In this document: one piece after another, positions 30,569 through 60,348 of the stretch
Layout of the letters: every line of letters starts with the position of its first letter
Position numbering within the stretch: the stretch's first letter is position 1
DNA from: Antechinus flavipes
Lineage: Eukaryota
Length of the DNA stretch: 64,000 nt
Direction: 5' to 3'
Assembly (NCBI RefSeq): GCF_016432865.1
Contig: NC_067403.1
Location: 255,564,001 to 255,628,000, forward strand
Translations under genes and position numbers: made by a program
Notes under the pieces: model-generated
Database searches by the model: none
Told to the model about the DNA's origin: nothing
What the model saw: the letters and a program-made list of their open reading frames with translations, nothing else

Positions 30569-30581
30569 TCAGCTCAGAGGC

Positions 30582-37710: not shown

Positions 37711-37712
<2 letters not shown>

Positions 37713-37750: not shown

Positions 37751-37753
<3 letters not shown>

Positions 37754-40649
37754 CTAAAGGACTTCCTCAAACAGACTGTGTATTTGGGAGGCAATAGGGC
37801 CTTTGGAGTTCAGAGAATGGGGTGACCTAGGTAGACTATACTTGAAGAAAATGCCTTTGATGGCTGAATGAAGGAACTGGAGGTAGGCTGTTGCAGAGTC
37901 TAGGTGTGAGGTGATAACTGACTGCATCAGGGGGAGGCAGTGTCAGGAGAAGGGCGGATTCAAAAGCTGCTGCAGAGGTGAAACTGGCAGTCCTTTACAA
38001 CTCAGATGGAGGGAGGGGGGGATGAGGCGTTGGGGGCACCTGTGTGAAGAGGCTGGGGGTTTGTCACCCCACAGCAATAGAGCTGAAGGAGGAAGATCCC
38101 GAGTTCTGGTATGGACATGTCCAAGTGGTCAGCAGGGAGGGGAGGGCTGTGGTTAGTTGTTCCATTTACCCGTTTTGTCTTAAATTCTCCCTTTTCCGTT
38201 CCCTCCTTTAGCTTTAGCTCCCCTCCTTTGCTGCAGCATCTTCTCAGACCAAGATTTTTCCAGGTCTGAGTCTTCTATTCCCAAAGCCTTGCTCTCACCA
38301 TCCATTAGGAGCTTGAGAACACTTTCACTCACTCTACTCTTCTCCCTCTGCTGCTTCCTGGGTGTTCTCCAAACTGGATCATTTCTATGGCTCAGTTCCA
38401 TCATCACGGGATGGATTAGCGGCTTCTTCCTCCTCAGAGCACCCAGCTCTCTCCACTTTAGGGGGCTCCAGGGAGTTTTGAAGCTCTAATGGCACGAGTG
38501 CCCCTTTCCTTCCCTTTGTTCTCTCTTCCATTCTCTCCCTCACAAAGGCACAATCTTCCATCTCCTACCTAAGAGCCCTCCCTCCACCACTGATACTCCC
38601 AAATCTCGTTTCTTTTAGGAATTCGTTGTCCCTAAAAACTTGGAGTGGAGAGGCAGCCCGCAGTTCCTTTGTAGCCATATCAGCCCACACCCGAACGCAG
38701 ATAAGCCAGGGACTGGGGCAGAAATGCAAACCTCACACTCCCTGCTCTCCGTGATGGGAATTCTGGCAGCCTTTCTCAGAACTACTTGTGGCGTGTATAT
38801 ATACCACAACACTAGGCCCAAGCACCTAAATAAAATCACAGATGGCCAACAAGCTTGAAAAATGAAAACATTCACAACCAAGTTGTCCCACCCACCGATG
38901 CCCGCTCCGGTTTCCTGCCTGTCTCTAGCTCCACCAGTGCTTCCTCCTTGCTGTCTGAAGACTTCCTCTCCTTTTTCCCATCACCCTCCTGGGTGACTCC
39001 CGGGGAGCTTTATCTGCCTCCATCCGCACTTGTTCTTTATAAACTAGCTGTACTCTGGCTCAGTAACTGGGTCTAAAGTTTGTTCAACATCCCCCATCTC
39101 TACCACCTTCTGCCAAACCGCTTCTCTGCTCCTAGTCCCAGTGAGCTCCAGGATGACCTCCTTTGCAAGCAGCTTCTATCCTCTTCTCATCTGCTCCAGT
39201 GCTGGGGAGCATGGAGGTGGGGGTAGCATGTGGCAGGGGAGAGTGCCAAGAGACACAAAGGAAAACTGAGCCAAAGAAGTTGTGTGCATTTGCGTGGGCC
39301 AAAGGTCGCCCAACTTGAGAGACCAGCTTCCTAACAGGGGCGGAAGTCCGGGCCTATGGCTCAGAGGGGAACTACAACTGATCTGGAGGTCACCAGTACT
39401 ACCTACCCCTGCCCAGGCTGCCCAGGGTCTCTGAGGGGCACACCGCCCAGGGAAGTGGGGAGAGGTCATTGGGCCTGTGGATCCCCCTCTGAGGGAGGTG
39501 GAAGGAAGGTATGAGCTGGCTGCCTACAGAACGTTTCCATCTGGGTGGGCCTACAAATGATTCAGGTTCATCCCGTTCTCCATTGAGCTCCTTGGGCCAC
39601 CAATGAATCTGCATCTCACCTGACTTTGGTCTTTGAGACCCTCCCAAGCACCAGTTCTGCCACCTGAAACCTGAAACATCTAGGTTTCACACTAGGAACC
39701 ATCAAGTCGAACCCTCATTTTAAAGAGGAAGCTCTTCGGGCCCAGAGAAAGCAGGAGATCCGTCCAAGTCTCGGCTAATCAGCGGCAGGACTGGTCTGGA
39801 CCCAGGTCCCCATTCCTGAGCTGGCTTGGGCTTATTTTCTCCACAAGGTTCCTTGATTCTTCCTGTTCCTGGGTCACTTCGCCCTGCAGATTTCATCCTG
39901 GCAGCATCTCCCCTTCCCTGGTCAAACCCTCCAACAGCAGCCCCACTTGTAGCTTCCTTACAAGTCTGTCCTCTCCTGTCCCCCTCAAATCCATCCTTCC
40001 AATGAGGCCCGGTGTAATCTTCTCTGCAGAGATCTGGGCCATGGTGCTGCTGACAGCCTTGGGGGGATCTCCTCCTATGATCTCAGTCAAGTTCTAGCTC
40101 CTCTGCACAGGCCCGCACCAGTCACTGCTCGGCGAGCTCAGCCCTCCTTCCTGGATCAGTTATTTTGTCTGGTGGGCCTGGAGCTAGCAAGGAGCTCAAA
40201 TTCAGGGTCACTTACTCACTACACTGTGCGACCTTAGGAAAGTCAGAAATCCAGCTTGCCTCAGTTTCAGCTGTAAAATGGGGGTAATAGCATCTACCTC
40301 CCTGTGATGTGAGGATCAAAAAAGAAAGTTGTATAAAGCATTCATCAGTGTCTTGGCACACAGAGGCACCATAAATTCTATAATTAGATATGCTTATAAA
40401 CAACAAATATTAGCTTCGATTTTCTAAATCACCTTGCTGCCCCTTCCATTTTGTGGGTTGGTTCATCCCATTCATATTCGGCATATTCAGTTATGATTGT
40501 TAAATGCATCACTGCTTTGTATTATTCTCTAAAATTGTTTTCCAACTTTTTACATAAAGGTGCAGAGACAAAGTTTGGCCCTCGCAATCTCTAGATTTAA
40601 TTTGCTTCTATCCCTATTCCTCTTTTCTTTTACCCAATAACAGGTTTTT

Positions 40650-41800
40650 TCTCAGTCCTTTTTGAAATCTAACCTTAGTTTTTTTTTACTCAACTAATTC
40701 TTCCCTTAACCTCCTTCCCTCTTATCTCCTCTTTCCTTCCTGTTTTTCTACTGAATGAAATATATCTTCCCACCCAACTGTATATTTTTCTCTCCTCTAA
40801 CCAATTTGGGGTGAGGTTCAAGTGTTGCCTATTCCCCACTCCTCCCAACTCACTCATTTCTAAAGATAAATTCCCAGTGTGAGATAATTTTCCCATCTTC
40901 CTATTCCAACCTCCTCTACACTGTCCGTTCCTCTCCCTTTCAATTTTTTTTCTTAAAGACCAAGAACAGCAAAATCATTCTAGGCCTTCTAATTAGACTC
41001 TGAATTGAGACATCCAATTGAGAATTGATACACATCGAGAATGCAAGTGTTTATCTCTTCAATTCCTTATGATGGCTCACTTATATTCACATATTTGTTT
41101 CTCATGAGGATTTTGCTTGTATTTCAAAGTTTCTTCTTGGTGAGGTCTTTTAATCAGAAATGCTCAGAAATCCTTTATCTCATCAGTTGTTTCATTAACG
41201 ATCCAGTCCTCCTCCCTCCCCACAGCTTCACTAAGATTATACTGTTTTGTTAGGTAATTATTCTTGGTTGTTGTAAGTCTAGATTTCACCTCTTGGAATA
41301 TTTTCCAAGCTCTCTGCCCCTTAAAATCTATGATTACCAAATCTTTTGTGACCTTCCTTGTCTCCTGGATATCTGAATTGATCCTTTCTTGAGATATTTT
41401 CTTCTCTGATTTGGAAGCTGTCTTGGTTTTGGCTGCAATATCTTTAGAAATTTTCAATTTCAATCCCTAGAAACTTCATGCAGAATTTCCTTCCAGGAAG
41501 TAGCCTATCGTTTCTTTCTAAGTTTACTTTGTCCTCTGGCTCTAAGAGATCTGGGAAGTTTTCTTTCATTTCTGAAATTGGATGTCTACATTTATAATTT
41601 TGGTCATGACTTTAAATGATCTCTCATCAATGTTTTCCAGGTCAGTAAGGCAAAAGGATAAATTTACCCAGCCAATGAAGAACATTCTGTACATATTGTA
41701 CAGAATATCCTCCTGTTGGCCAAGAAAACAAAATTTCACTAGTTCTGCTTTTTCCTCTGTGGTCAATTTTAATCATCTCATCCATCCTCAGTAGCTATTA
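40650..41800 (-). mobile_element. Degraded L1 fragment (ORF1 C-terminal region)
   Basis: ORF 41164-41463 contains IQETRKVTKDLVIIDFKGQRAWKIFQEVK, which resembles L1 ORF1 IRITQDLAASTLKDRRAWNMIFQRAK. Confidence 0.7.
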
Positions 41801-44800
41801 TCTGATCTCTTCTATTCTCCTATGTTCCCCAGTGCAGCTGAAAATAATCCTTCAGTTATCCTTAGTTCTCTGCTCTTAACACCTTATGACAATTATTTGT
41901 ACATGATTGTTCCAGGCCTTTTTACTTATCCCCCAGTACCTACCATGACTCCCATCTTTTGTGCAAGTAGTTTTAAAAATTGGACTTTATAAGTTTAGTT
42001 GAGACCCTTCCTTTCATTCCTTTTGTTTACCCAACCCTGTGGAACCTTTGGAAAATAACCAAGGACTAGAAGTGAAGGCAACCTGCTCCCTGACATGAAG
42101 TCTATGTTATTTTTCTCTTAGTCAGTTCTCCTCCCTATCCATTCTGTTCATGAGGTCACTCTGCTGTGGATCATGGCGCGCCACACGATCCAAGGAAGCA
42201 GACAGTGGGGGTGACCAAAGGAGAGGGAGCAGCCACATGAATGTTTCGAGGAGGGGGACGACGACTGGTCCCATTGTTCTTGTTCCACGGATGGCTGAGG
42301 GATCTGGTGCAAACAGAGATGATCCAGAGATCAAAATGGTCAATATTAAGTAGATAGAGGAAGACAGGGAAACTAAGACACTGCCGGTGGAACGGTGCCT
42401 TGGTCCAAATCTCAACCTGGAATGAGGCTTTCCAAAGCTATGAAATGGCACATACCTGCTGACTCAAAGTGAAATAATGAGAGCTATTAACCGTTAGGCA
42501 AGCAGGGACGATGAATGGAGAACGAATGGCAGAACAGTGTTTGTATAATGGAAATATTGCAGGGCTCCGAGGTACGATGACTTTGATGCGTTCTGAGACA
42601 CTTATAAAGACGTCTGACACTGAGCAAAGTTAGGGGCACATTCACACAATAACCACAGTCATCTGAGAATGCAAAAATAAATTCTGACCTGCAACCATGG
42701 ACCCCATGCAATTCTGGATGTACAGTGAGTCTTCTAAATACAGAAAGCCCTTAAACACTGGTCCTACTATTGTTGCTCAGGAGACTGGGTTGGTTCTCTA
42801 ACAAATTTCAGTGATTCCAAATTTCTCCCTGCCCTAGCAAAACATCTCTTTTAACAGCCATACTACTCTTAAGAGTGATACGGATTTGGGAACACAAAGA
42901 ACTCGGAAAACTCCTAATGATAAATGTTCTAATGGGAAAAGGGGTCTCCAAACTGACCTCCGGGCCGTTCCTCTTACAGGGTACTCCATCTCCTATTTCC
43001 ATGTCTTTGTCCTGCCTGTGCTTGCCTGCCTGGAATTCGCTCTCTATTTACCTCTGCCTATAGAATCTCCAGCTTCCTTCAAGTATTAGCTGAAGGCAGC
43101 GACATGAGCTCTTCCCAAATGGCCCCAACTACCAGAGCCCTCTCCTGAAAAATTATTTTATACTTTATTTTTACATACCTGTGTCCATTCTGTCTCTCCC
43201 CAACAACCTCCAAGGAAGGAGGAATCCTCAGAGATTGTTCAATTTTGTCTTTGTATTCAATCAATTAATCAATCAGCATTAACTTTCTAAAATAATAGAA
43301 AACCAGTCCCTGCCTCAGAGAAGCCTCCATTCTAATGGGGGAACAACATCGATCTGAGTATATGCAGAACACACACAAGGAACAGAGGGGAGTGTGGGAA
43401 CGGGGGTGCTGGTGGCTGGGAGATCAGGAAAGGTTTTGTGGACAAGGTGAGGCTCCAGGTGCACTTGAAAGGACCAAGGATTCTAAAAAAGGCCCTGACA
43501 CAGGGCTTGGTAAATGGTAAGCCTTTGGTGGAAGACTATTGAATTGCTCCCTTCTCCAAGTCCACGGACCCTTTCCTTGTGATAAAAATGAGCAAATCCA
43601 AGAGCCACCATTCTGCCTCTGTAGTTCTCCCCAGGAAGTGGGGGTATGGGTGTCCTGCTTCCTCATCGGACCATCAAGTCTAAAACTAGTCACTGAAATG
43701 AGTCTGGGTCTGGCTCTTTCTGCGTGTAGTGTTCTCCTTCACCAGAGGGAAACCGAATATTCTGAAAATGTCGGCCTTCCTGTCCAAAGCACCTTCTTCT
43801 CACTTTCTTGTAGGGGTCGGTGTTCCCAGAGCTCTAGCTGAGGTGACCTGAACTAAAGAGGATGAAGCACCTAGGGATTTCTCCTAGGTGAGAAGGCAAT
43901 GCCTTGTGGGAGGGCAGTGAACCAGGCGCATCCTAAAGGCACCCCCGTCATGGGGAGGGGTCTCCTGAGTAAAGTGTGAATGAATTTTGGGAGGGTGATG
44001 AGGAGCTGAGGATTATCCACAAACCTAAGTAATTCAGAATTCTTGCGGCCCACTCTTCCAGCAAGCTGAGCCAACCTCAAGACCAGAAACATTCAACAAG
44101 GTCCATCGGAATCAAGGCAGAGACCAAGAACTGTATGAGAGCAGGGTGAACAGCCCATCACATCCCACTGAGATACCAACCCTCCCTCAAACCCACTATT
44201 AACCCCCCGCAGATTGAAGTGGAAGGGACCTCAGAAATCACCCAGCCCAACCCCTTAATTCTGGGGGGTGGAGTGTGTGTAAAATTATTTTTATTGACAT
44301 CTTTTGTTTTTACATCATCATTTCTGAACACGTCCCTCCCCTCTCCTGAACTCAGGAAACCATCCCTCACAACCAACATTTCAGGCCAGCACGCCAGCCA
44401 CCGCACAACAGAGCACGCCAGGTTTCCGTTCCAGTTTCCTAAACCTCTTCCAATAAAGGAGGGAGTTGCATTTGCTCCACTCTTCTATGGGGCGGTCACT
44501 GTCAGTACAAGCTTCCAGTTCCTTTTTGAAGGTTTTTCTAGGAATATTTTTGTAGCCATTCTTGATTATTATCCTATTTTGTGCTAAATGCTGGGGATGC
44601 AAAACCATCTGTGTCCCCACCCAAGGACCTTACAATTCTATTGCCAATCGTCCAGCTCCCTCACTTTACAGATGAAGAAACTGAGGATCAGGGTCACATG
44701 GTTACTGGGTGTCTCGGGCGGCACTTGAGCCCAAATCTTCAGGCTTTAGAGATTCCGGGGTCAAGTGCTAGAAAACGGGAAAACAAAGACAAAAGGCCCC

Positions 44801-45429
44801 AGCACTGGCTGCCCATGCTCCGGGGAAGGGATGCGGGTACACACACAGTGAGGGGACACAGTGGGCGTACACGGTGAGCCAGGGAAAGCCAGCCCGGGAG
44901 CCGCAGATCCCAGGTCTGGGAAGCTGCCACACACCTCCTGCGGGAGGCCTGGGCTGCTCTGGGATATCTCTGGCTGTGTTCTGCCGCCTGGGACTGAGCA
45001 GAACCAGGTGAAGCCCCCTTTTCCCTGGAGAGCCCCCGTCAAATATGCCCGTTCCATGGACAGAGCCCACCTAAAGCTTCCGGCACCCCCACGGCCTCGG
45101 AGCAGCCACCACTCTGCACAAGGGGAGCCAGAGGAGGGCTTGGAGTCATTAGCGGCCAAAGTCAGAGTGCGCTGGTGCCATTCCCGGCTGGGCGGCAGCT
45201 CCCTCCTGACATCACCAGGGGGGCCCCATATTCTGCCCCTTCTAGAGAAGCCTCGGAAAGATTCTTTCTGGGGTTTGACCCTATCCTCTGGCTCCAGATC
45301 AAGGGCTCAGAAGTCATGAGCCAAAGGGTTGGTGACGCTGCTGCTGGGTAGGACACGGCAAGTCTGGGAGCTGGGGGTGCACAGGGGGCTGGGGAGGGTA
45401 GGGGATGACCAGCAGTGGGGAGGGGGGGG

Positions 45430-45680
45430 TCAGGGAAGGAAAAAGAGGAGCTCGAGGAAACGAAGGGGAGAGAAACAGGGAAGGACAGAGGGACGAGAAG
45501 GAAAAAAGGAGAAAACAGGGCTAGAAAGGCAAGGGGGCAAAGAAAAAAGCAGAAAGCGGAAAACAACAGAAAACAGGGGAGAGGAAAATGAAGTAGGAAG
45601 AAAGGAGGAAAAGAGAAGATGGAATTGAGGAGGAAGGAGGAAAAAGCGGAAGAAAGCAGGGATGGAAGACGGAGAGGAGG
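45430..45680 (+). repeat. Purine-rich (GA) low-complexity tract, with a paralogous tract at 57520-57710
   Basis: Almost pure A/G, immediately on the intron side of the putative exon 1 donor in both duplicated units. Confidence 0.85.
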
Positions 45681-45720
45681 AGGGCAGAGGCTAGGCCTCC
45701 CGCCGAGCGCCCGCACTCAC

Positions 45721-46400
45721 CCGCAGCCCGGGGGTCCCGAGCTCGCGCTGATCCCGGTCGGCGGCGGCTCCAGCGGCGGGTCCTCCGCCAGCTCATTAGG
45801 CTACACTCCCTCCGCGCCGGAAATGCGGGCGGGGGACACGTAACTTCCGGACCCAGGGCTCTCGCGCGCTCTCTTTCTCTCTCCCCCCTTCACCCGCAGG
45901 GCCCTCGGACACAAGTACGCGGCAGCGGGGGCGGAACGAGTGCCCCGTGCACACACAGAACGTGCCACCAGGAATGGGAGGCCGAGGCTGGCGAGCCCCG
46001 CAGCACCTCGAGCTTTAGCGAGCGCCGCTTCCCGCTGGGAAACTGTGCGTCGTCAGCCTCGCCCCCCATAGTCCGCGGGGCGAGACGTCCCGAGAGCTCC
46101 CTTTGGATTGGTCTAGAAAGAACCGTGCGGACCAATCAGCAGGTAGAGATAGCCTAGCCAATGGCGACAGCGGGCCTCGGCAGGCTGTTGCTACGGCGAC
46201 GGGACTCTGGCTGGGACGGGGAGGGATGGAGCCTAGGCCAAGGCCGAACCTGGAGAATAATTAATGAACGCCAGCCCTAGGCTGTGTGGGCCGAGGGGAG
46301 AAGGCTGCGGGCAGGGCACCGCCACCCGGGAGTCCCTCCTCCGTAACCAAGCCGTTGCTAAGGCTCGTGGATTTCATCTTTGCAACAGCTCTCAGACACG
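45721..46400 (-). promoter_or_regulatory. CpG-island promoter and exon 1 paralogous to SYVN1's (copy B)
   Basis: Exon end gcgagctcgggacccccgggctgcgg|gtgagtg versus SYVN1 gcgagctcgggggccccgagctcccg|gtgagtg. ETS pair at 45817-45824 and 45843-45850. CCAAT boxes at 46107-46111, 46132-46136 and 46158-46162. X-box-like GTTGCTACGGCGAC at 46187-46200. Confidence 0.75.
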
Positions 46401-47911
46401 CCCCCTTCTCTCCCTCCCCTTGCCGCAGGCCCTCGCGGCCCTAGGAGGTGACTCGCCGGAGGCCGGGACAGGCCTTCCTCCAGCTTTCTCCGACCCATCC
46501 TCCCCTCAGCCACTAACGCCCTGTCCCTCCGCTACTTAATAAACACCGTGTGGCCTCCGGGATCAAATACAAAACGCCGCTTGGCGTTCGAAGCCCCTGG
46601 TACCCCAGCCCCCTCGCCGTGCCGTTCTTGCACCTTTCTTCCTTTGCACTTGGGTGATCCCGGCCTCCTGGCTGTTCCAGGAAAACACTCCATTTCCCAA
46701 CCCTGGGCATCCTCTCCGGTTGTCTCATGAAAGCAATCACCTCCCTCCTCAGCTCCAACTACAGACCCCTCCCTTCCCCCTTCAAGTCCCAGATAAAAGC
46801 AAAGCTAGGAAGCATCTCCCCCTCCGCCTTAGCCTACAGAGCTTCCTTTTTTGAGCTCCGCTTTATCTTGTCTAGCTCTCATTTGTACGGGGCTGTTGAT
46901 CAGGGTCTTCCCCATTAGAATCTAAGCTCCTTGGAAGCAGGGACTTGAGTTTTCTGTCAACAGTGTCTGCGACTGCCTGGAAGAGTGGATGCTTAAGACT
47001 TGTTGCCTGGTGCTGCAGTCTTGCTCTGCTCTGTTGCCCCTAAGTTGGGTGACCTTGGATTAGGGGCATCTCCTCCCTGGGCTACAGGGCGTCTGTGCCA
47101 TGTCTTCCAGGGGCCTTTCTCTTTCCTGGTCTCTGCCTCTGCTCATGTCCCCAGCACCCCCTCTAACAAGGAAACAAGGGGCTGGCACCTTTCAGTGGCT
47201 AAGCATCTCTGGGACATGCCAGGTGAGATGGAGGAGTTAAAGGCCCGAATGCTCAGAACCAAGGGAAAGGTTTGCCCAAGTGGGAAGAACTGCTGCCCCC
47301 TGAGGTGCAGCTGCCAGGACCTTCCCCACACAGGTGTGGCAATGCCAACTTAGGGGTCTTCGGATGAAGGCCGGAAATCTAGACTGTCTATATCACTTCA
47401 GTCCATGGTTCTAGCAAGCAGCTGATCGGATTCTGAATGATGGGGGCTCCTGGGGAACCTATGGAATGACGTGATATGATACATCTGAGTATAGCGTACA
47501 GCTCTCCATTTAGCTCTGCCATCCTTTCTCGGCCTGATTTTATTTATAGGAAGATTGTCAAAATTGATAGGATTCGAGGCCTCCATCAATATGTCATCTT
47601 TTGATCAATGAAAAAATATTCCACGTTTGGATTGCCAACGATCAAAAATATCCCATCGGTCTAAAACCTGAGGTTTTTTTGTTTTTGCACTGTCTCGTCT
47701 TTGCCCGTGACCTCCCTGGCAACCAGTAGATTTGTACAAATGATTATCTTCATTAAGTCACTTTGCATCTTGGCAGGGTGACCCAAGGCAAGACTTTAGC
47801 CTCTGCTTGCTGCCATTTCCTCATCCACAAAAAGGGTGGTTTTAAGGACTGAGTCAGGCACCGGTAAAGGGTTTTGCAAATGTTGAAGTACTTTATACAC
47901 TAGCTACGATC

Positions 47912-47955
47912 ATGATGATGATGATGATGATGATGATGACGGTGACGATGATGAT
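47912..47955. repeat. (ATG)n microsatellite, with an imperfect (CA)n tract at 48140-48195
   Basis: Read directly from the sequence. Confidence 0.9.
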
Positions 47956-49699
47956 GGTCTCAAGGCCCTTCCCCATCTCAGTTGCCTTTTTCTCGACACT
48001 TTCACTTTATCAATGTCTTCATTTTAGAAAAATGTTTTATTGATGTTCTTTTTACACAAAGCTGTGACTGAGCAAAGATCCTTTTCTCTCACTTCTAAGT
48101 AAAATGACACTGGACAATTCAGACTGTCTGAAGAGTGTGATCACACACACTCACACACACACACATACACTCACGCACACACACGCACGCACACCCCATC
48201 CCGTTGCAATGGGAGCATGTTTCCTCACTGGTCACTGCTAACAGCAACCCCACAGCATGCAGCCCAGCACCGCTAGACACGGTCCTGCAGACGGCTCAGG
48301 ACACGGGCTGGGGCCATCCTCTGCCTCGCCCTGGACTGTCTCCTGCTCCGGCCACATCACGTGGTCATCCACGATCGGCCTGGCCGGCCACTTCACCCCC
48401 TAGTCCTTTCCCAGAAGCAGCACTGTCCTGCTCCCCAGCCTCTCCCCGTGGTGTACATGTGAGGCTTGTAGCTTCCTTACAAGTCTGTCTTCTCCTGTCC
48501 CTCTCAAATCCATCCTTCCAACAAGGCCCGGTGAAATCGCCCCTCTGCAGAGAGCTGGGCCAAAGCCTTTGGGGGTCTCCTCCTGTGCTCTTAGTCAAAT
48601 TCTAGCTCCTCTGCAGGGGCCTGCACCATGTGACTGCTCGGGCAAGCTCAGCCCTCCTCCCAACACTGGCCACCACCAACCTGCAGGCCTTTATGGCTCA
48701 CTAGTCCCTCAGCACAACATGTTCCTCCTCATCAACTAACGCCCAACTTTAAAGCCCCTTTCCTCAAGAAACCTTTCTGGAAACCCTGTCTGTAAATGGG
48801 CTCCACTCCTTCGGATCAACCGAAGGGCTTTCCAGGGATCTTCCCAATGCACTTAGCAGGTATCGGCAGGTTTTCCAGGCCTCCTCTGAGCCCATGTCAG
48901 ACCTGAGTAATCTGGACTGGGGCTGAGCTGGCCTGTTTCACTCCTTCCATCTGGTTGCTCCCTCTTTTCATTATCTTGCTAATTGGGCGCTAACTCAGTG
49001 ATTTCTGCTGGGCAGAAGGACAATCACATCCTCTAAACTGCCTCCATCTTGGCCCAAGTCCCATTTGCCATACCCTAGTCCTGGCTCTGTCTTATTCCCC
49101 ATTAGGACAGCAGCTCCTTGAGGCGGGGGAACCTGCTCTAGGAACTGAACGGGCTTGGAGTCAGAAGACCTGGGCTCAAGTACCCTCCTGGAGCCTTCCT
49201 GAATAGGAGAGCACAGGTTAAGTCACTTCCTCGCAGAGCCTCAGCTTCCTCCTCTGACAAGCCCCTCGTCAAAGGACCAGATCCTCAGGGACCAGATCTG
49301 GACCCCCTCCCCTCCCTCAAAAAAAAAAAAAAAAAAAAAAAGCTGGTTTTGCCCCTGCATAATTAGGGGCCAGATCACCCACAGCAGACCCAGGAGCCCT
49401 GGGATGGGCTCCCAGGGCCAAGGGAACTATAAGTGGCCCAGTAGTCTCCATAATCTACTTCTCGTAGTTGATACTATAAAAGGAATGGGAGTGTGTGGGC
49501 TTTTCTCCCACACTCCTTCCCTCCTGGATTTGCTTCAAGGCCTGCCTTCCCTTTATCTCACGTCAACAAACTCAACAGATGGACTGTACAACAGGAATAC
49601 ACAGCCCTTCTATAGCACTCCCAGGCTTGCCATCGCTCACTTGGACTGTTGCAATAACAATGATAACAGCCAGCAGGTATGTTCTACTGGAAAAATCTC

Positions 49700-50640: not shown

Positions 50641-51949
50641 TCAGGTCTGGCTTTGGCCTCCCTCGCTGCCTGTAGCCACATGGACCTCCTAAAGGTTCTG
50701 GCCTCCTGTTTCACTGCACTATCGCCCATTCTCTAACCAGAAATAACGTTCCTCATGCTCGGGTCTGAGGTGAGCACAAACTCCCATAAGGCACTGACAG
50801 TTCTGTCCAACCTGGCAGATCCCTTCCTGCCCCTCGCCCTCCATGAGTTGCACAGTCCAGCTCCTGCTATTTCTCCCACAAGAGGCTCCATCTCTCACCT
50901 CCAGATCTTTGCCCTCACTGTCTTAGGAAGACCCGGCTTTCTTTCCCTTCTGTGGGAGGATGCTTCTACCCTCCCTCCGACTGCTAGTTCTTCCTCTAAA
51001 GTTACCAGAATCTCTCTGGGTCTGTGCCCTGCAAAGGCACCGGGCTACTTTGTCCCTAAAATGAAGGTAAGAGGATTGGACAGTGGCCTGGGGCAGGGTC
51101 ACGTGGGTTCTATCCCCCAGATCCCCGCGCGGTCACAGGAGCCGGCACACGGAGCCTGGCTCTCATCCGCAGGCCTGGGGACCTGTCTGCCCTTGTGGCT
51201 GTTGGTCTATGAAAGCATCTCAGTGGGACAGAAAAGTCCTAGAGAAGAGGGGCGATCCACCCAAGAAACATGATGTGGGCCACGCAGCCTGAGGCCCGGC
51301 CTTCACAGGCAGGCTCACTCACGTGTCACATGAGTGAGGAGTGGGGCTGACGGGGGCACGGCTGGCAATCCTGGCAAAGGGAGCTGCGGTAGGAGAGTGA
51401 GGGGAACTGGGAACATGCCACAGGAGCAGCAGCCCCTGGCCTCCCTCATGGAGCTGGGGATCTGCCACCGAGAAACTAGGAAGGCCTGAGGAGACACAAG
51501 CCACGGCCGCTGAAGGGAGGTCCCGCGGGACTGACAGGGACTCCACCAGCCTCCACAACCGGGGGCTGCCTCAGCTGGGCAAAGCCCCTCCACACAACGG
51601 TGGGAACTGTCCTTTGTCCCTCTGGATGTGGCTAAGGTGGCTAATTGGACCCAACGAGCGCTGCTCCTTCTGAAGCTAGCTCCTAACTGATTCCCAAGGC
51701 CTGGGTCTGGCACGGTAAACTGGATCCATGTCATTTCACCACCCTCCTCCTCTCCCACCTCCAACCCTTCCAATCAAGGATCAGCTCCAAGCGGGGAAAT
51801 TAAGATTCCATTTTCTGGGGGAAGTCCCAGCTTGGGGGGGGGGTCACTAGTCGGCGTACAGTTGAGGGCAGAACCAGTGACGAAGGAGGGGGATCAGCCA
51901 GTGTCAGTGCAGTCTAGGCGGTGGAAGGAGGCATGAGGGCCCAGCAGAG

Positions 51950-53300
51950 AGCACCAGGCCCCATAAAGACCCTTCATGAGGCCTAAGCAGTGGGGCCATG
52001 AGCTGAGCGAAGGCTGGACAATGGGAGTATGGTGCACTGGCAGCTGGGCAGTGAAGGCCCTTCAGCCCCAGCCAAGGTCCCTGCCTTGGACATTATGCCA
52101 ATCACGCCAATACCAGGTTCACTGGGCCATCCCAGTGTCCCCAAGGACTTGGGGCGCGGGCCACTGACCCCTTGGGAGTTGGTACCTAGACCTGTGTCAG
52201 TCACTGTGGGTAAGGTCAAATGGAAACCCCTGGAGTTGCCTGAAGCAACACTCAAAAACTCAGCCCTCCCCCCTTCCCCGGGGAAGTCATTTCCCCTGGA
52301 GCTGGAGGAGCTCGGCACTGTGCTCTCCCAGGCCCCGCCATGGAACACGGCCCTTCCTGGCCTCATCCTCCCGTTCTAATCCAAACGATGGCTGAGGAAA
52401 GTGGGGAGCAGAGGTCAAAGGGGCCAAAGTGGGGGTGACCGACTCCCCCAGACCTCGGTGGCAGAGACCCCCGGGAAAACACCCAGCTTCTGCCTATGTG
52501 TGTTTTGCAGAACACAGCAGAGGGTATCCAGAAGCTACTGCTACTTGCCAGCACAGAGAACCCTGGCAGCTGCGTGTGCCTCTGCCCAGCCAGCAGTGTC
52601 ACGGGCACTAGCTGTGGGTGGCGCTGTTGGCAAGGTCAATAAGCAGTTATGAGTCCCTGGAGGCCGAGGCCCTCCACTTCTGCCAGCCCAAGCCGGTGGT
52701 CCCACATTTGACAGGTATTCACACCTAACTTTTGGCGGCCCCGAGTCCCGAGGGACAAGCGCAGCCAGTGGCCGGCAGATGAAAAAGCCTGGAGGGATGA
52801 GCCACGCAAGATCTTTATTTAAAGCGATTCTACAGGTTTGGTCGAACAGTGGGAACAAGCCTAGAAACCCAATGGAGGAATTTCTGTCTTCCTCCATTAG
52901 CTCTTCTTGGGGCATGCTGCTATTAGCGACTTTTACTCTCGGTTGTACTGACCCTCCAGGCCGATGCCCTTAAAAGGACGGCAAAGGTCAGAGTGGGTGT
53001 CCATTGCCAACATGGAAATAGATGCCATGCCGGGGCAGACGTGGGCCATGATCCTACTGACTAAGTGTGAAAGAGCTACTTCTGCCCACCAGAGCTCCTC
53101 ACGCCAATGGCCAAAAACCTGAGGGAATAAGAGCCTGTCCCGTGTGCCCCGACTTCTAGGGCAGGGTGTCCCACCTCCCAGCAGTCACGTCCACGATAAG
53201 AGCGTTGTGTCCTTCACAGGGAAGGGGCGAGGACGAGCTCTCTGGTCCTGTTCGGCTGCTTCTTGTACCTCATCTCAGGAAGGCTTCCCTCATAAAGACA
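51950..53300 (+). mobile_element. ERV-L-like (class III) pro-pol fossil, heavily deleted
   Basis: Collinear remnants against recalled HERV-L: VHWQLGS~VHWGKGN; ALDIMPITPIPG~LLDTGSELTLIPG; VGKVKWKPLELP~VGKAKWKPLELP; RGYPEATATCQH~QGYINSPALCHN (52519-52554); TWK*~KWKW; SAHQ (53081-53092); CPVC~CPIC (53136-53147). Confidence 0.7.
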
Positions 53301-53559
53301 AATTAGCAGCCAACCCTCTCCAACCCTCTTTCTCTCTATGCTTAGTCTCAAAATCCCCATTTCTCTCCCCCCTTCCCCCCAGCCCGGGGTAGGGGCCTCC
53401 ACGTTTTGGGGGAAATGGCTCAGGTCCCCCTCTATGAGCAGGCTTCCCTTTCCATAGAATGCTTCAGGTAAGTTCTTTCCTGAGAGGGCCTGGAGGACCA
53501 TGGGGCTGTACTGATGTGAAAGAAGTGAGCTATCTCAGCATAATTACAATTCACATGAA

Positions 53560-54005
53560 TTTACCTGCACCAAAGGGTCTCTCGACGGCAACCTCAAATC
53601 CCTGGATGAAGGTGGGGAAGACTCCTCGTCCAGGCCCTGGAGAAGAGACGACAGCCTGTTAGCCAAGTAGCAAAGATCCGCTGACAGCTGACCTCAGAGA
53701 GGTGATGACCTCTCAGCTGTTTCTGACCCCGAGGATGAGTGAGAGTCCTGGAAGGGTAAAGGTCCTCATCCAAGCTGTGGTCCTGGGGTTATATTTGCTC
53801 AGTCATCCCTCTGCACCGGGAAGGGACCTTCGTGTGACCCGTGCCGATGATTTCTGGCCTGTGTTCTCTTCCACGCTGGGACTCATGCTGAACTCCTTTA
53901 GAACCTGTCATTTACCTCTTTGTGACCTTTGCTTTCAGTTTTCTTCTCCCCCCACTAAATAACTTCTTGTACTGCCAGTCAGGCTTTTCCTATTCCTAAG
54001 GACAG
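53560..54005 (+). mobile_element. Possible LTR at the 3' end of the ERV-L-like fossil
   Basis: Located just after the pol remnants. Has a pyrimidine-rich end with taaataac and a terminal CA. No matching 5' LTR was recognised. Confidence 0.3.
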
Positions 54006-57000
54006 GGGCTTGTCAGGGCCCTTTAAGGAGTCAGAGGTTGCCTAGAAGGTCTACAGACTCATGATGGAAGTAACGTCTTCTAGGGACTGTGCCACACAGA
54101 CGGGCTGGTTTTTCCTTATTAGGCAAGGAACTGGGTCCAGGGGTTTAAGGCCCCGGCCCTGCTCTGGCTTCTAGATCCAGTAGGGAATATTGAGCCGCTG
54201 AGGCGGCAGGGACTCTCAGACCAGCCATTTCCCACTCTCAAAGATATCCCTGATTTTGCGATGACACTGTCTCACAGGGGTTGCCAAGGTGCAGGTGACT
54301 TACAAGGCAAAGAGCAGAGCCCCAGTAGAGGGAAGGTACCAAGTCTGATTTGTCAGTGTGGGCCCAGAAGCTATCGCCATGGAGACGGCTCATGGGAAAT
54401 CAGGAAGTTGTCTGGGACGGTGGCCCATCAATATGACAAAAGACGGAAATGGACGATGTTGGAGGGGAGATGGGGAGACGGGCAAACTGGTACATTGCTG
54501 GTAGAACGCTGACTGACCCAGTTCTTACGTAATCCAAGTTAGGGTTACACTCTAAGTCACTAAGAGGTGTGTGTTCTTTGATAAGATAACTATAGGATTA
54601 TTAAAACCAAAGATCTTGAGGTGGAAGGGACCTTAGAGGCCATCAGGTTCAGTTCCCTCACTTTAGAGATAGGGACATTGAGGCGAGATAATAATTTGCC
54701 CAAGGTCAAACATCTCATAAGTGGGTGTAGCAGAATCTGAACTCGACTTTTTTTTTTTTTTGCTGAGGTGATTGGGGTTAAGTGACTTGCCCAGAATCAC
54801 ACAGGTAGGAAGACCCAAAGTGAGCAGAACAGGGAGAACATTTACGTAATGACGACAATAACCTAAATAAAGGAAAACAACACTGATAAGACTTCACAAT
54901 TTTAATCAAAGCATGGAACAACATGGCCGCTGAGGGCTGACATAGCCATGCCCTCCCGCCCCATGGGAGAGGGGTGGCCCATTATAGGTGTGGAGAAAAG
55001 CCTGACTTTTCAGACATGACCACCAGGTTGATGTTTTCCTTGACCGTACTTATTTGTTACAAAGATTCAATTGGTCCTGTGGTATGTGTCAGTGGGGAGT
55101 GACAGTTATATTAAAAATATATGAATAATTAAAATATGGAAAAAACAAAACAAAATAAAAAAAACCCTGAAAGATAATAGATGAATGGCAGGGATGATGG
55201 AAGGCCTAGAGAGAAGCATGGAGCACTTCTGTGGAAGTTAGAGAAGCAGGGGAAGAAGAATCATGTGGAATGAGAAACGGGGATGTGTATATATTGATCT
55301 GCCCCAATGGACATATGGGAGTATGGTGGGACCTCGACACATGGCGAGATCCTCAGATGATGCTCTCCACGGGGACAAAGGAGACCCAGCTCGATCTCTA
55401 TCAGCGTTTTCAGTGACCCCAACCTGTTCCCTGCACAAGTCCAAGTCTTCAAACCCTCATTTCCACAGGAGATGTTTAAGTGCTGTTAATCAAGGAATAC
55501 TAAGAGTTCAGAAGACCCTCATGGCAAAATCCTAAAGGGAAATAAGGAGACCTCCAAACAAGCCTCCATGCTGCCATTTATACAGGATATTCCAACTGCC
55601 TTGTCTCCACGCCTTAGCACCAGTTGTGTCTTGTCTTGACCGACTCCTTCCGCCCCCACTCCATCCATCTTCACCTCCGCCTCTTGTTTAGCTCAACTGT
55701 CACCTCAGACAGAAGCTGTTCTTATTTCTCGGCAACAGGGCCTTCCTTGGGAAATCCCTTCGAACATACTCATGTCATATTCTCCTTGTAGCTCCCCTCA
55801 CACCTCCATGAATGCAGCATTCTCAAGGTCAAGGGTTTTTGATTTTTGTCTGCATTCAATCAATCAACTGGCATTTATTAATTAAGATAATTGAGAAGCA
55901 AGCCCTCCTCAGAGACGCCTCCATTCCTAAGAAGAAAATCCAAGAGCCACCATTCTGCCTCTGTAATTTTTCCCTTCCTAAAAAGTGTGTGTGTATGGAG
56001 GGGATGGGGATGGGGGAGTGGGGTGTGTGTGTGTATATGTTCCCTGCAATGAGTCTGGGCCTGGCTCTCTGTGTGTAGTGTTCTCCTTTACCAGAGGCAA
56101 ATGATCTGCAAAGGCAGGAACACTGCACCCCTTGGAGGGTAATGGGGTAGAGAGAAAGGAACAGAAGACCAGGGGGAGCAAGGATTTGCCCCAAGTTCCT
56201 AGGGTGGGTTCCAAGGTTAGAGTGGACAAGAACCACGCCCCCTTTCTGACCTCCCTGTCCACAGCATCTTCTTCTCACTCTTTTTTGTGGGGGTTAGTGC
56301 TCTCAGGCACTTGCTCAGGTGACCTGAGGGAGGGGAAGAAGCAGCTTGGAATTTCTCCCAAGAAGAGGATCTTCTTTCAAAAATGCTCCCTGCAGAGCCA
56401 CAGTTTGGGAGCGAATGAACAGCAGTTTAGGAAGGACCTTCTGAAGAAAGTGTGGGTGGATACTGGGGGGGAGGAGAGGATGGAACTCATTGGAACCCAC
56501 AAAATACCCTCTTATAGAAGAAAAAAAACCCAAAAAACTAATGAGATTTCTGTCTCACCTCTACCCCAAGTCCAGAAGGGAAGATTTTCTAGTATTCAAT
56601 TAAAAAAAAATTCAGTTTCTGTTAGGCCTTGCTATGAATGCTTTTTTTGAATCCAAACAATCAACAAACATCTATTAAGAGCCTATGATGTGCCAGGAAC
56701 TAGGGAATACAAAGAAAAAAAAACAGAGAAACAATCAGCTTTAAAGATGCCCATGTTCTCATGTCCTTGTCTACCCTCTACATTTTCCAGCCAGAAAATC
56801 AGGTACAGGTTGGAAATAGCCTGCAAGTTCACACCAAAATCAGATGGTCCAAGTGGAGACTGGATTCAAGTGCTCAAGCTTTGGGGATCCCTCAGTCAGC
56901 ACAACCCTGACTGCTTACCCAGGAAGGAGTGTCTGCCCTTGGAAGAGGGACTAGGGGGAGTAGGCCAGGAAAAGACTGGTCTTGGAGGAAGCCCAGCCTC

Positions 57001-57800
57001 TCTGCCCCAAGGCAGCCCAAGCATTCCCTTAGCCTTGGGATCTAACTTGGTCTCTGCCGACCCCTACCTGGGATGCCCAATCCCATTCAACCAAGCCTTT
57101 CTGAGGCACCCTTGGACAAGCTTCCTCTCACCTCCTCCTTTTCTCCTTCTAAGCACAGAGAAGATCCATGGGGCTTGGGCATGTACCCTGGATCTGAACC
57201 CCTGTCCAGGGAACCTGTCCCCACCTCTCCCATCGTGGGGGTGGGGGTGGGGGGGGGAAGGCAGCCAAGACGTGCAAACTCTCCAGCCTAGTCCCCGGGT
57301 TTGAATACCTAGTGATTCCTCTTTGGTGGTAATTGGGAGGGGGAGAAGAAAGGGAGGGAGGCTCAGAGAGAAGAAAAGGAGGGATGAGGGAGGAAAGACA
57401 CCAGTTATGATGGCAATGTACCTGAAAACTGTTTAGTTAAAAAAAAAGAAAAAGAAAAAAAAGATGTACATTTTCAAAAACCAATGTAATGATTTTAATA
57501 AAATAGAGGAAGCTGAAGGATGAAAGGAAGACACAAAGATGGGGTAGAGGAGAGGAAGGAAGGGGAAGAGAGAGAAAAGGGAGAGAGGTGGAGGAAGAGG
57601 AAAAGGAAAAAGAATGAGGAAGAGGAGGAAAGAAGGATGAGGAAGGAGGGAGAAAAGAAGGAGAGGAAGAGAGGAGGAGGAGAGGAAGAAGAGGGAGAGA
57701 GAAGGAGGGGACTCACGAAGCCAGCCCCTCCCCGCCCCGCAGTGGCCTGGCATCCCTCTCCTTCAGGGCAGCCGCCCAGGGACGGATCACAACAACTTAC

Positions 57801-58700
57801 CCCGGTGACGGCCCGCGGAAGGTACCGGCCCGGGCAACCTTTGGCCCAAGGCACCAGGAAGCTAGCAGACGCCGCAGCCTAGTAACCGGACTCCCCGCCC
57901 CATCCCAGACGGAAGTGCGGACTGTAGACCCTCCACTTCCGGACGGGGCGGAGAGGCGAGCAGGAGGCTGGGGATGTACCAAGCGCCCCCCTCCTGGATC
58001 CTGTTCATCTCAAAGCGGGTCACTTCAGCGCAGGGCACCAGATAATTCATTAGAGCATTGGCGGGAGCGTATTTCCATGAAGAACTTGGGAAATCAGGAG
58101 TTTGTTGTGGAAGAAAACGCAGTAGTCTCCCCCCGTTCCTCGGGTCAAACATGGTATTATCCTAACGCTCTCTTCAGCCCAGAGGGCTACGGCCCCGCCC
58201 TCGGCCTACAATTTGGCCTGTACCATCGGTGGGGGTGAGAGGTCAAAGAAATTGCTTTTGGAGGGCCGAGGAAACGAAGTCCAGGAGAAATGCGTCCAGG
58301 GTCCACACCTTTAGTAACACTAACATAAACTATGAAGATCATACTAAGTCCGAAGGACATCTTGGGTCCCGGCGTTAAGAATAAAGTTTTTCTAGATCAG
58401 AAACACCACTGCTCTACTCCGTGCGAAAGATAGACCCTCGTGGTTTCTTCAAAGTCGCCGGGACCCTCACAGCCAATCAGGCTCCGAAGGGCGGTGAGGG
58501 GGCGTGACTTCAGTTTAGGTCGGGCTAGCTGAGTCTCCCAGGGGAGTGGCGGGAGATGTGGAAAGTGACACAGGCGCGGAATTACGAAACGCGAATTGGC
58601 TAAGAGGTCTTTAATTAGGGCCTGCATCAGGGGGCGGGGCGGTTAGCATCCTAGAGTCCTCTCCGTAGGCGCCGCTCCGGGGAAGGAGCTTCGGGCTGAG
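57801..58700 (-). promoter_or_regulatory. CpG-island promoter and exon 1 paralogous to SYVN1's (copy C)
   Basis: ccagacggaagtgcggactgtagaccctccacttccgg (57905-57942) versus SYVN1 ccagaccggaagtgcgagccgcagacacctcacttccgg. ggatgtaccaag is shared. Donor GGG|GTAAGT at 57801/57800. Homology to 31030-31580 continues to 59308. Confidence 0.78.
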
Positions 58701-59310
58701 ACCTCTCGCTGCTCCCCGGCTTTCTCTGTCCTTGTCTCGGCCTCTCCATCTCCTCAGTCCCCCCTGCGGAGCAGAGAGTCTGTGGGCTGGGAGATTACTT
58801 TCTATCTCACGTTGGGCGGCGTCTGCGGGGAAACAAAGTAACCTCGGAGGGAAAGGCCTTAGTTGTTACTTTCGGCTTCGCCCCCATCCCTGGCGGGTTT
58901 TCTTGCGTTCCCGAATCTTCTTGAGTCCCTTGCTGGAGATCGGGGCTACCGCACGCCCTCTGGTTATACCCCGGACCCCTAGCTCCAAGCTCTTTATTTG
59001 CGCCTCCTCGGTCTCGGGGTAGCGATAAAGGAGGCCGTTGTAATGCTATGGAAAAGGGCTTTTAGGGATGTGGGGGAGATGTGAGGAGGCTGCCGCCAGA
59101 TGCCAAGGGGGAAGTTCCTCGACCCCCAATATCGGATTATTCAAAAACTTCTGGGAAGAGGGCCCCTGGCCCTAAAGCCTTTCAGAGGAGTTCTCTCTCA
59201 AGCAATTAGAAGCGTGAGAGCTCAGGGTACAAAGGAAAAGGTTTGCCCAAGTCGCAACAGTAGCGGCCCCCTCAGATGGGCCTCCCCCCCCCCAGGTGTG
59301 GCAGTGCCCC

Positions 59311-60343: not shown

Positions 60344-60348
<5 letters not shown>

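What the first reader, a model, noticed from the sequence alone, without database searches (positions are those of the whole stretch)
38620..59310. Direct tandem duplication (about 9 kb and 12 kb) with patchy, exon-like conservation
At least seven collinear blocks are shared between B and C, and the units meet at about 47.35-47.4 kb. Conservation is uneven: a 30-bp exact match (43594/55936), a block of about 190 bp at high identity (39947/48466), and a conserved acceptor cag|GTCACCT.AGC (43847/56323) sit among nearly unalignable flanks. Each unit has a promoter, exon 1 donor, pyrimidine-rich intron start and exon 2 acceptor on the minus strand. This is the anatomy of a duplicated lncRNA or decaying gene pair, or possibly a gene-conversion mosaic.
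Basis: partly seen in the sequence, partly recalled or inferred. Interest (0 to 1): 0.72.

Follow-up and report, generated by a model that had tools for sequence, protein, structure and literature searches.

The report
Triplicated SYVN1 promoter and first exon
Upstream of the ER quality-control gene SYVN1, this marsupial has two extra, very old tandem copies of the gene's CpG-island promoter and non-coding first exon set in non-coding DNA; they still look like working promoters, but I could not show what they transcribe.

Summary
Six to seven collinear, same-strand blocks link 39.9-47.4 kb (B) to 48.5-59.3 kb (C), where 0.01 are expected by chance.

There is a third copy (A), which is the promoter, exon 1 and 1.7 kb upstream of SYVN1/HRD1 itself (29.86-31.6 kb, minus strand). 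The repeating pattern is promoter, upstream module, block 1, blocks 2-4.

B and C hold no SYVN1 coding exon, no conserved reading frame, no Pfam domain and no Rfam family.

Both still look like promoters:
- Each keeps a 1.4 kb CpG island (observed/expected 0.63-0.95, against a background of 0.05-0.4), and most of its CpGs are its own.
- Each has the paired ETS sites found only at these three places in the window.
- Each has a perfect GGTRAGT splice donor about 100 nt downstream.

Best reading (0.55): an ancient tandem multiplication of the SYVN1 5' module, whose extra copies survive as live promoters with non-coding first exons. They could feed lncRNAs or act as ERSE-less alternative SYVN1 promoters.

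Block 1 (87% identity against 60-78% elsewhere) points to constraint or gene conversion.

The same reader had already noted the three promoter copies on this window.

The parts
29400..31400 (-). Copy A: the CpG island over the SYVN1 promoter, non-coding exon 1 (ends at 29875), intron 1 (29874-29688) and exon 2 with the ATG at 29670. Paired ETS sites lie at 30018-30051 and an exact ERSE (CCAAT-N9-CCACG) at 30550-30568.
   Evidence: PDB phmmer gives synoviolin residues 1-45 (E 2e-20), 73-129 and 312-368. CpG observed/expected is 0.68-0.98. The ETS pair is, the ERSE and the donor GGTGAGT at 29869-29875.
31027..31597 (.). Copy A upstream module. It is homologous to C 58774-59314, and its last 130 nt are homologous to B 47232-47361. 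Homology ends sharply about 13 nt after a shared CAGGTGTGGCAGTGCC.
   Evidence: nhmmer gives E 7.5e-53 for A-C and E 4.6e-12 for A-B. A-C identity is 69%, K2P 0.40.
39944..40151 (.). Block 1, B copy. This is the best-kept block, with a sharp edge at 39946.
   Evidence: 82-87% identity to 48463-48661. There are only two copies in the window. Indels of 13, 2, 1 and 1 nt and stops in all frames show it is non-coding. The fold z-score is -0.2 to +1.7.
42678..44023 (.). Blocks 2-4, B copy. They include the 30-nt exact match at 43594-43623 and the CAGGTSACCTG motif at about 43840-43852.
   Evidence: nhmmer chunks give E 1e-11 to 1e-19 against 55288-56503. blastn identity is 60-78%.
45400..45714 (-). 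Pyrimidine (CT)-rich tract directly after the B donor. It is shared in position with C and absent from A. The break in homology to SYVN1 falls here, just inside intron 1.
   Evidence: Sequence. HSP 45580-45681 / 57505-57601. A-B homology stops at A 29863.
45715..46800 (-). Copy B promoter module. It comprises a CpG island (45.4-46.8 kb), paired ETS sites at 45818-45850, CCAAT boxes at about 46100-46170 homologous to the ERSE region of A but without CCACG, and exon 1 ending at 45721 with the donor GGTGAGT.
   Evidence: CpG observed/expected is 0.63-0.95. ETS pair, donor. Homology to A: 45709-45853 ~ 29863-30054 and 46028-46210 ~ 30483-30667. Alignment.
47232..47361 (.). Copy B, end of the upstream module. 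The rest of the module is lost or unalignable in B.
   Evidence: Three-way identity is 72-74%.
48463..48661 (.). Block 1, C copy.
55288..56503 (.). Blocks 2-4, C copy. They include the 30-nt exact match at 55936-55965 and the CAGGTSACCTG motif at about 56316-56328.
57505..57794 (-). Pyrimidine-rich tract after the C donor.
57795..59200 (-). Copy C promoter module. It comprises a CpG island (57.8-59.2 kb), paired ETS sites at 57910-57942, and exon 1 ending at 57801 with the donor GGTAAGT.
   Evidence: CpG observed/expected is 0.71-0.86. ETS pair, donor. 57877-58290 ~ A 29986-30407, E 1.2e-12.
58774..59314 (.). Copy C upstream module. It includes a 35-nt stretch (58852-58886) identical to A 31100-31134 except for two C/T changes.

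Best explanation
Shown: an old tandem segmental multiplication copied the 5' end of SYVN1/HRD1. The copied part comprises the CpG-island promoter, the non-coding exon 1 with its splice donor, about 1.7 kb of upstream sequence and neighbouring non-coding DNA. The window therefore reads: SYVN1 body, then P-up (A), then b1, b2-4, P-up (B), then b1, b2-4, P-up (C). The left breakpoint lies just inside SYVN1 intron 1. B and C contain no coding sequence.

Inferred: the two extra modules are not dead relics. Each has stayed an unmethylated CpG island with the paired ETS (GABP/ETS1-type) sites and CCAAT boxes of the SYVN1 core promoter, and each has a perfect 5' splice site about 100 nt downstream. 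They therefore most likely still fire on the minus strand and produce a short non-coding first exon.

Open: which acceptor that exon joins. It could be a local acceptor, giving a lncRNA. It could also be SYVN1 exon 2, 16 and 28 kb downstream on the same strand, giving alternative SYVN1 promoters that have lost the ATF6-dependent CCACG half of the ERSE.

Most of the weakly similar blocks are what is left of the duplicated intergenic DNA. Block 1 alone is clearly better kept.
For: Duplication and third copy:
- HSPs and the shuffle control.
- A-B and A-C homology.
- The identity of A as SYVN1.

Non-coding nature:
-.

Live-promoter signs:
1. CpG observed/expected is 0.63-0.95 over about 1.4 kb in B and C, against 0.05-0.4 around them. 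This holds despite 30-50% sequence divergence.
2. Only 5 of 20 to 7 of 22 CpGs are shared with A. The density is therefore kept by turnover, as in germline-unmethylated islands, not by slow decay.
3. CCGGAAGT-N17-CAYTTCCG occurs only at the three promoters, with 0.01 expected. An ETS site (EBS-1) in the proximal promoter is reported as crucial for SYVN1 expression (PMC1794516).
4. Of only three GGTRAGT matches in 30-64 kb, two lie 97 and 109 nt downstream of the B and C ETS pairs on the minus strand, matching the SYVN1 exon 1 donor.
5. The three copies are about equidistant (72-74% in the shared 110 columns). A is slightly closer to each of B and C than they are to each other, as expected if A evolves slowly and the copies arose close together in time.
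6. Four RNA runs of one study each hold 6-7% of the sampled words of 39.9-47.4 kb.

Orphan and distal CpG islands commonly act as promoters (PMC2944787 and PMC5378174, as listed).
Against: - There is no direct evidence of transcription starts or splice junctions.
- The 6-7% RNA share could not be placed on the sequence. It could come from a repeat transcribed elsewhere or from DNA carry-over.
- A CpG island can persist without productive transcription, for example through Polycomb or CXXC binding.
- B and C promoters are barely alignable to each other (50-53% in forced alignment). The argument for constraint therefore rests on short motifs.
- No orthologues from other marsupials could be fetched, so selection is inferred from one genome.
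Confidence: 0.55

Rival explanations
1. One reading: B and C are two copies of a spliced minus-strand lncRNA gene. Its exons are the conserved blocks, with exon 1 joining exon 2 at 43847 / 56323 and block 1 as a distal exon.
For: Promoter and donor are kept in both copies. Blocks 3-4 reach 69-78% identity, include a 30-nt exact match and share CAG|GTCACCT. Block 1 is 87% identical. RNA runs hold about 0.5 kb worth of words of B.
Against: - The 'acceptor' is a near-palindrome that also reads as a plus-strand donor, and conservation runs about 40-50 nt past it on the 'intron' side.
- Block 1 has no GT or AG at its sharp edge on either strand.
- There is no structure signal or covariation.
- Identity of 60-78% is in the same range as old MIR-type repeat copies in the window, at 70-74%.
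- No junction evidence exists.
Confidence: 0.25
2. B and C serve as distal alternative promoters and first exons of SYVN1 itself. Their exon-1 donors splice to SYVN1 exon 2 (acceptor at 29688/29687), which carries the ATG. This would give the same protein from promoters that keep NF-Y and ETS sites but lack the CCACG half of the ERSE.
For: - B and C have the same orientation as SYVN1 and lie upstream of it.
- The donors derive from, or match, the SYVN1 exon 1 donor.
- No coding exon lies between them and SYVN1.
- An exact ERSE is present only in A. The B homologue keeps CCAAT but not CCACG. ATF6 action depends on the CCACG part (PMC1475745).
- Distal CpG islands are known to act as alternative promoters (PMC5378174).
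Against: Such transcripts would have to read through 16-28 kb and through promoter A. No read evidence exists. The joined exon model was not searched, because joined models were to be left out.
Confidence: 0.25
3. B and C are functionless relics. This would be a neutral, very old segmental duplication whose alignable patches are chance survivors, with CpG islands that persist for reasons other than promoter use.
For: - Only about 2.3 kb of 9-12 kb aligns.
- Most blocks are 54-78% identical.
- B has lost most of the upstream module.
- The ERSE half-site is lost.
- No annotated-like ORF is present, and none of 10 ORFs is in the protein collection.
Against: CpG density is kept by turnover in both copies while the flanks sit at 0.05-0.4. 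The ETS pair and a perfect donor are kept in both copies; the chance of two perfect donors in the right 150-nt windows is about 4e-4 from the window-wide frequency.
Confidence: 0.2
4. Gene-conversion mosaic. The uneven identity, above all in block 1, reflects later patches of conversion between the units and not selection.
For: Block 1 has K2P 0.15 against 0.4-0.75 elsewhere, and it has sharp edges. The copies are in tandem and in the same orientation, which favours conversion.
Against: Block 1 still differs at 13% of sites and by a 13-nt indel, so any conversion is itself old. There is no sign of recent conversion anywhere else: the three promoter copies are equidistant at 72-74%. Conversion cannot be told apart from constraint without orthologues.
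Confidence: 0.15
5. The blocks are independent insertions of common interspersed repeats that happen to be collinear.
For: The window holds MIR-type and SINE-type repeats that give cross-hits between units. Block 1 has sharp edges and a 'younger' identity. Part of block 2 (43240-43332) looks SINE-like by eye.
Against: - Six blocks share the same order and strand, and flanking homology is continuous over 1.35 kb.
- Profile searches find exactly two copies of blocks 1-4 and three of the upstream module in 64 kb, and none elsewhere.
- The promoter and exon 1 module is a copy of a unique gene's 5' end.
- No target-site duplications flank block 1.
- The by-eye SINE lead was not borne out.
Confidence: 0.04

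Closest known systems
SYVN1/HRD1 proximal promoter (ETS site EBS-1 bound by GABP/ETS1; ERSE bound by NF-Y plus ATF6)
   Same: B and C carry the same paired ETS sites at the same spacing. B also has homologous CCAAT boxes, and both have a homologous or equivalent exon 1 donor (PMC1794516, PMC1475745).
   Different: They are not attached to the SYVN1 coding exons. The exact ERSE is present only in A, and overall identity to A is only 54-74%.
Orphan or distal CpG islands acting as unannotated or alternative promoters
   Same: These are CpG islands away from any coding gene start, kept at high CpG density, upstream of and in the same orientation as a gene (PMC2944787 and PMC5378174).
   Different: Here their origin is clear: tandem duplication of the neighbouring gene's own island. 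Their activity was not shown.
Tandemly duplicated alternative first exons (for example the UGT1A and clustered protocadherin variable first exons; from my own knowledge)
   Same: Several promoter-plus-first-exon modules lie in tandem upstream of shared downstream exons, and each has its own donor.
   Different: In those loci the first exons are coding and splicing to the common exons is proven. Here the first exons are non-coding and the join to SYVN1 exon 2 is untested.
lncRNA genes born from partial duplication of a protein-coding gene's 5' end (from my own knowledge)
   Same: A promoter and first exon of a coding gene were copied without the coding body, and transcription would run into non-coding DNA.
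   Different: No transcript evidence was obtained here.

Membership tests
Tandem segmental duplication | Collinear, same-strand homologous blocks in adjacent units, beyond chance | tested here: met
   There are 6 collinear HSPs, and 4 HSPs against 0.01 in shuffles. A third copy of the promoter and upstream module was found.
CpG-island promoter | At least 200 bp with GC above 0.5-0.55 and CpG observed/expected above 0.6 | tested here: met
   B 45.4-46.8 kb and C 57.8-59.2 kb have GC 0.55-0.68 and observed/expected 0.63-0.95.
CpG-island promoter | Transcription initiation, or an unmethylated state, shown experimentally | tested here: inconclusive
No methylation data were available.
SYVN1/HRD1 paralogue or pseudogene (coding copy) | Recognisable homologues of SYVN1 coding exons (transmembrane region, RING finger) | tested here: not met
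   nhmmer of 21-29.9 kb against 31.6-64 kb finds only a dispersed repeat and the promoter/exon 1. tblastx gives no exon hits.
SYVN1 promoter copy | Homology to the SYVN1 core promoter and exon 1, including the ETS site | tested here: met
SYVN1 promoter copy | ER-stress element CCAAT-N9-CCACG | tested here: not met
   The exact ERSE occurs only at 30550-30568. The B homologue has CCAAT but GCTCT in place of CCACG.
Spliced lncRNA gene | Junction-spanning reads joining the proposed exons | not testable with these tools
Protein-coding gene | A reading frame kept open in both copies, codon-wise substitution pattern, domain hits | tested here: not met
   Similarity appears in all six frames with stops. 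Block 1 has indels of 13, 2, 1 and 1 nt. No Pfam hit for 10 ORFs.
Known structured RNA (Rfam) | A covariance-model hit at the gathering score | tested here: not met
   There are 0 hits in the window. Only chance-level hits (E above 1) fall on block 1. Fold z-scores are -0.65 to +1.66.
Interspersed repeat | Many dispersed copies in the genome | tested here: inconclusive
   There are no further copies in the 64 kb window. The genome-wide copy number could not be tested. Metagenome scans for a 25-mer and a 30-mer found nothing.

The most novel reading that the evidence does not exclude
The two extra SYVN1 5' modules have been kept by selection for tens of millions of years as working promoters that lost the ATF6/ERSE input. 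They would either give SYVN1 a stress-independent set of alternative first exons, or produce cis-acting lncRNAs that tune the neighbouring ER-stress gene. On this reading block 1 is a constrained regulatory element duplicated with them.
Probability: 0.25. Interest if true: 0.55.

Novelty: new member of a known kind. Interest (0 to 1): 0.35.

Why it matters
If the extra modules are active, this is a clean natural case of promoter sub-functionalisation by tandem duplication. A stress-inducible housekeeping gene, the HRD1 ERAD ligase, would have gained extra promoter and first-exon modules that kept the constitutive NF-Y and ETS inputs and shed the ER-stress half-site. It would also show how orphan CpG islands and lncRNA first exons can arise from a neighbour's promoter. 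If they are inactive, the case is an ordinary old segmental duplication. Its only oddity would then be how long CpG islands can outlive their use.

Tried and rejected
- **Coding readings.** Rejected, on tblastx of A against B and C and of B against C, plus Pfam on 10 ORFs. A regex scan for Speedy/RINGO signatures, tried because SPDYC follows SYVN1 in human by my recollection, found nothing.
- **SYVN1 body remnants in B and C.** None found.
- **Known or structured RNA.** Rfam at gathering score and at E up to 10, an alifold run and single-sequence folds gave nothing.
- **Further copies of blocks 1-4**, after C or inside A. None found.
- **Orthologous DNA from other species.** Exact look-up of 10 ORFs found none in the collection. 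Two metagenome scans, for a 25-mer of block 1 and the 30-mer exact match, gave 0 hits.
- There was one slip. The local nhmmer run, which compared window against window inside the sandbox, still contained them in its query chunks. The few weak repeat hits it gave there are not used.

Full report
**Setting**

The window is from a marsupial. Earlier notes of this scan place NAALADL1 and CDCA5 just before it and name the genome as the yellow-footed antechinus. I did not verify the species.

On the minus strand at about 24-30 kb lies SYVN1/HRD1. Three ORF pieces match human synoviolin residues 1-45, 73-129 and 312-368 (E 2e-20 to 6e-31). This fixes the following:
- the start codon at 29670;
- exon 2 beginning at 29687;
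- intron 1 at 29874-29688;
- the end of the non-coding exon 1 at 29875.

**Observation**

blastn of 36-47.5 kb against 47.5-64 kb gives six plus/plus HSPs in the same order, listed with their identities under the observation check.
- With word size 11, four HSPs remain, against a mean of 0.01 in 100 locally shuffled controls.
- Chunked nhmmer merges the middle blocks into one 1.35 kb homologous stretch, 42678-44023 / 55288-56503.
- The 30-nt exact match, the high-identity block at 39944-40151 / 48463-48661 and the shared CAG|GTCACCT are all present.
- Only about 2.3 kb per unit is alignable.
- Between block 1 and block 2, B has 2.5 kb and C has 6.6 kb of unrelated DNA. The C stretch includes a dispersed SINE-type repeat copy at 54.75-54.81 kb that is absent from B.

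**A third copy**

A self-comparison of the whole window and nhmmer show that the promoter-side part of both units is homologous to the 5' end of SYVN1:
- A 29986-30407 ~ C 57877-58290 (E 1e-12)
- A 31027-31584 ~ C 58774-59312 (E 7.5e-53)
- A 29863-30054 ~ B 45709-45853
- A 30483-30667 ~ B 46028-46210 (E 1.6e-8)
- A 31459-31597 ~ B 47234-47361 (E 4.6e-12)

In all three copies, homology stops at the same point, about 13 nt after a shared CAGGTGTGGCAGTGCC. Profile searches find three copies of this upstream end, two copies of blocks 1-4, and nothing more in the window. The SYVN1 gene body (21-29.9 kb) has no counterpart to the right of 31.6 kb apart from a dispersed repeat (tblastx). The left breakpoint therefore lies just inside intron 1, about 10 nt after the donor.

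**Phase of the repeat**

The layout is P-up (A), b1, b2-4, P-up (B), b1, b2-4, P-up (C).
P-up) need a separate event to explain A.
- A unit defined as P-up-b1-b2-4, that is the SYVN1 5' end plus its upstream intergenic DNA, needs only ordinary tandem multiplication. Its periods are 15.8 and 12.1 kb between ETS pairs. The third unit's b-blocks would be lost or would lie beyond 64 kb. In unit 1 the gap between the upstream module and b1 is already 8.3 kb of repeat-rich DNA.
- In the 110 columns shared by all three copies, the pairwise identities are 73.6, 73.6 and 71.8%. The site patterns AB|C, AC|B and BC|A number 12, 12 and 10. This is a star-like pattern with no extra B-C kinship, and it fits the second phase better.
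- I cannot decide the phase without sequence beyond the window.

**Age**

Alignable non-island blocks have K2P of about 0.4-0.75. This is the same range as copies of old MIR-type repeats in this window, which are 70-74% identical (that these are MIR is my own recognition of the core motif). I infer an age of tens of millions of years. It cannot be dated without an outgroup.

**Coding and RNA tests**
- B-C similarity appears in all six frames with stops.
- Block 1 carries indels of 13, 2, 1 and 1 nt.
- Ten long ORFs have no Pfam hit, and none is in the protein collection.
- Rfam finds nothing at gathering score in the whole window, and only chance-level hits on block 1.
- Block 1 folds no better than shuffles (z -0.65 to +1.66). 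With two sequences, covariation has no power: 1 compensatory pair out of 46.

**Are B and C dead or alive?**

Four sequence features argue that the promoter modules have been maintained.

1. CpG islands. Both are still CpG islands. In 400-nt windows, CpG observed/expected is 0.63-0.95 across 45.4-46.8 kb and 0.71-0.86 across 57.8-59.2 kb. It falls to 0.05-0.4 on either side.
2. CpG turnover. Most of their CpGs are not the ones A has: 5 of 20, 6 of 28, 4 of 11 and 7 of 22 are shared. The density is therefore held by turnover, as expected for DNA that stays unmethylated in the germline, and not by slow loss. That methylated CpGs decay fast is established knowledge.
3. ETS pair. The inverted pair CCGGAAGT-N17-CAYTTCCG occurs at 30018-30051, 45818-45850 and 57910-57942 and nowhere else in 64 kb, with 0.01 expected. 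A proximal ETS site (EBS-1) is reported as the crucial element for SYVN1 expression (PMC1794516).
4. Splice donors. The window holds 17 matches to GGTRAGT, of which only three lie in 30-64 kb. Two of these are on the minus strand, 97 and 109 nt downstream of the B and C ETS pairs, at 45715-45721 and 57795-57801. They mirror the SYVN1 exon 1 donor at 29869-29875. From the window-wide frequency, the chance of this is about (150 x 17 / 128,000)^2, or roughly 4e-4.

By contrast, the exact ERSE (CCAAT-N9-CCACG) is present only in A, at 30550-30568. The homologous B stretch keeps ATTGG / CCAAT boxes but reads GCTCT where A has CCACG. ATF6 acts through the CCACG part together with NF-Y on CCAAT (PMC1475745).

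**What the modules might transcribe**

This is the untested step. A first exon with a strong donor must join some acceptor.

One candidate is the conserved CAG|GTCACCT at about 43847 / 56323. That motif is a near-palindrome (CAGGTSACCTG). On the plus strand it reads as a donor, preceded in B by a good pyrimidine tract and TAG. It also contains an AGGTCA nuclear-receptor half-site, and conservation continues on both sides of it. It is therefore no proof of an exon.

The other candidate is SYVN1 exon 2, which lies downstream on the same strand. This would make B and C alternative, ERSE-less promoters of SYVN1, in the manner of distal CpG islands used as alternative promoters (PMC5378174).

Expression evidence is limited to one result. 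Four RNA runs from one study each hold 6-7% of the sampled 31-mers of 39.9-47.4 kb, equal to about 0.5 kb, and DNA runs hold 54-90%. The expressed part could therefore not be located.

**Uneven conservation**

Most blocks (54-78% identity) need no special explanation at this age. Block 1 is the outlier, at 169 of 195 identical (87%, K2P 0.15), against roughly 65% pooled over the other HSPs. It has sharp edges with no splice consensus on either strand. Possible explanations are purifying selection on a regulatory element duplicated with the unit, an old conversion tract, or, least likely, two insertions of one repeat family. Only orthologues can tell these apart.

In the upstream module, A and C share a 35-nt stretch that differs only by two C/T changes. 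B has lost it.

**Verdict**

This is a non-coding tandem duplication with promoter-like units, but the units are copies of the SYVN1 5' module and not an independent gene pair. There is no decaying coding gene, and the 'exons' are unproven.

My best explanation is given at 0.55. B and C would be ancient extra SYVN1 promoter and first-exon modules that are still maintained as live CpG-island promoters and feed non-coding first exons into a lncRNA and/or SYVN1 itself. The case is a new member of a known kind and of moderate interest.

After, no letters of 44656-44695 went to any database or search tool, and I masked them in scripts. The exception is one local window-against-window nhmmer run, whose query chunks still held them. 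Its hits there are not used.

Noticed in passing
window 27705-27746 and 28636-28677: There is a perfect 42-nt direct repeat, 931 bp apart, in two SYVN1 introns. On the gene strand it is a pyrimidine tract followed by CCAG|GGCACTTCAGCTG, which looks like an acceptor. An exact match of this length inside one gene is odd.
   Followed up: partly
window 45794-45796 (minus strand): B exon 1 holds an ATG that A and C lack. By hand count, 76 nt to the donor plus 17 nt of SYVN1 exon 2 would put it in frame with the SYVN1 start codon if B exon 1 were spliced to exon 2. That would add about 31 arginine-rich residues. It lies only 22 nt after the ETS pair and so may be upstream of the start site. The joined model was not built or searched.
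   Followed up: no
It reads as a 3' splice site on the minus strand and a 5' splice site on the plus strand, and it contains an AGGTCA nuclear-receptor half-site.
   Followed up: partly
window 24419-24590; also 32582-32692, 34947-35113, 54745-54812, 60344-60484, 62492-62607: A dispersed SINE-type repeat family has copies 65-91% alike. One copy sits in a SYVN1 intron, and one sits in C-only DNA, which means it inserted after the duplication.
   Followed up: partly
window 31100-31134 and 58852-58886: A 35-nt stretch of the upstream module is identical in A and C apart from two C/T changes. It contains a GC box (CCGCCCC). It is absent from B.
   Followed up: partly
window 50700-53200: A GC-rich (0.55-0.62) but CpG-poor stretch is present only in unit C. 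It has several 120-170 aa ORFs on both strands with no Pfam hit. Its origin is unexplained.
   Followed up: partly
window 37705-37781, 48117-48202, 56007-56040: These are (GT)n/(CA)n microsatellites. The one at 48.1-48.2 kb lies in the 1.1 kb spacer between the end of B's upstream module and C's block 1.
   Followed up: no
window 39900-47400: Four metatranscriptomic RNA runs from one study each hold the same small share (6-7%) of the sampled words, whatever the library size. This suggests one discrete expressed piece of about 0.5 kb, or a repeat transcribed elsewhere. It could not be located.
   Followed up: partly
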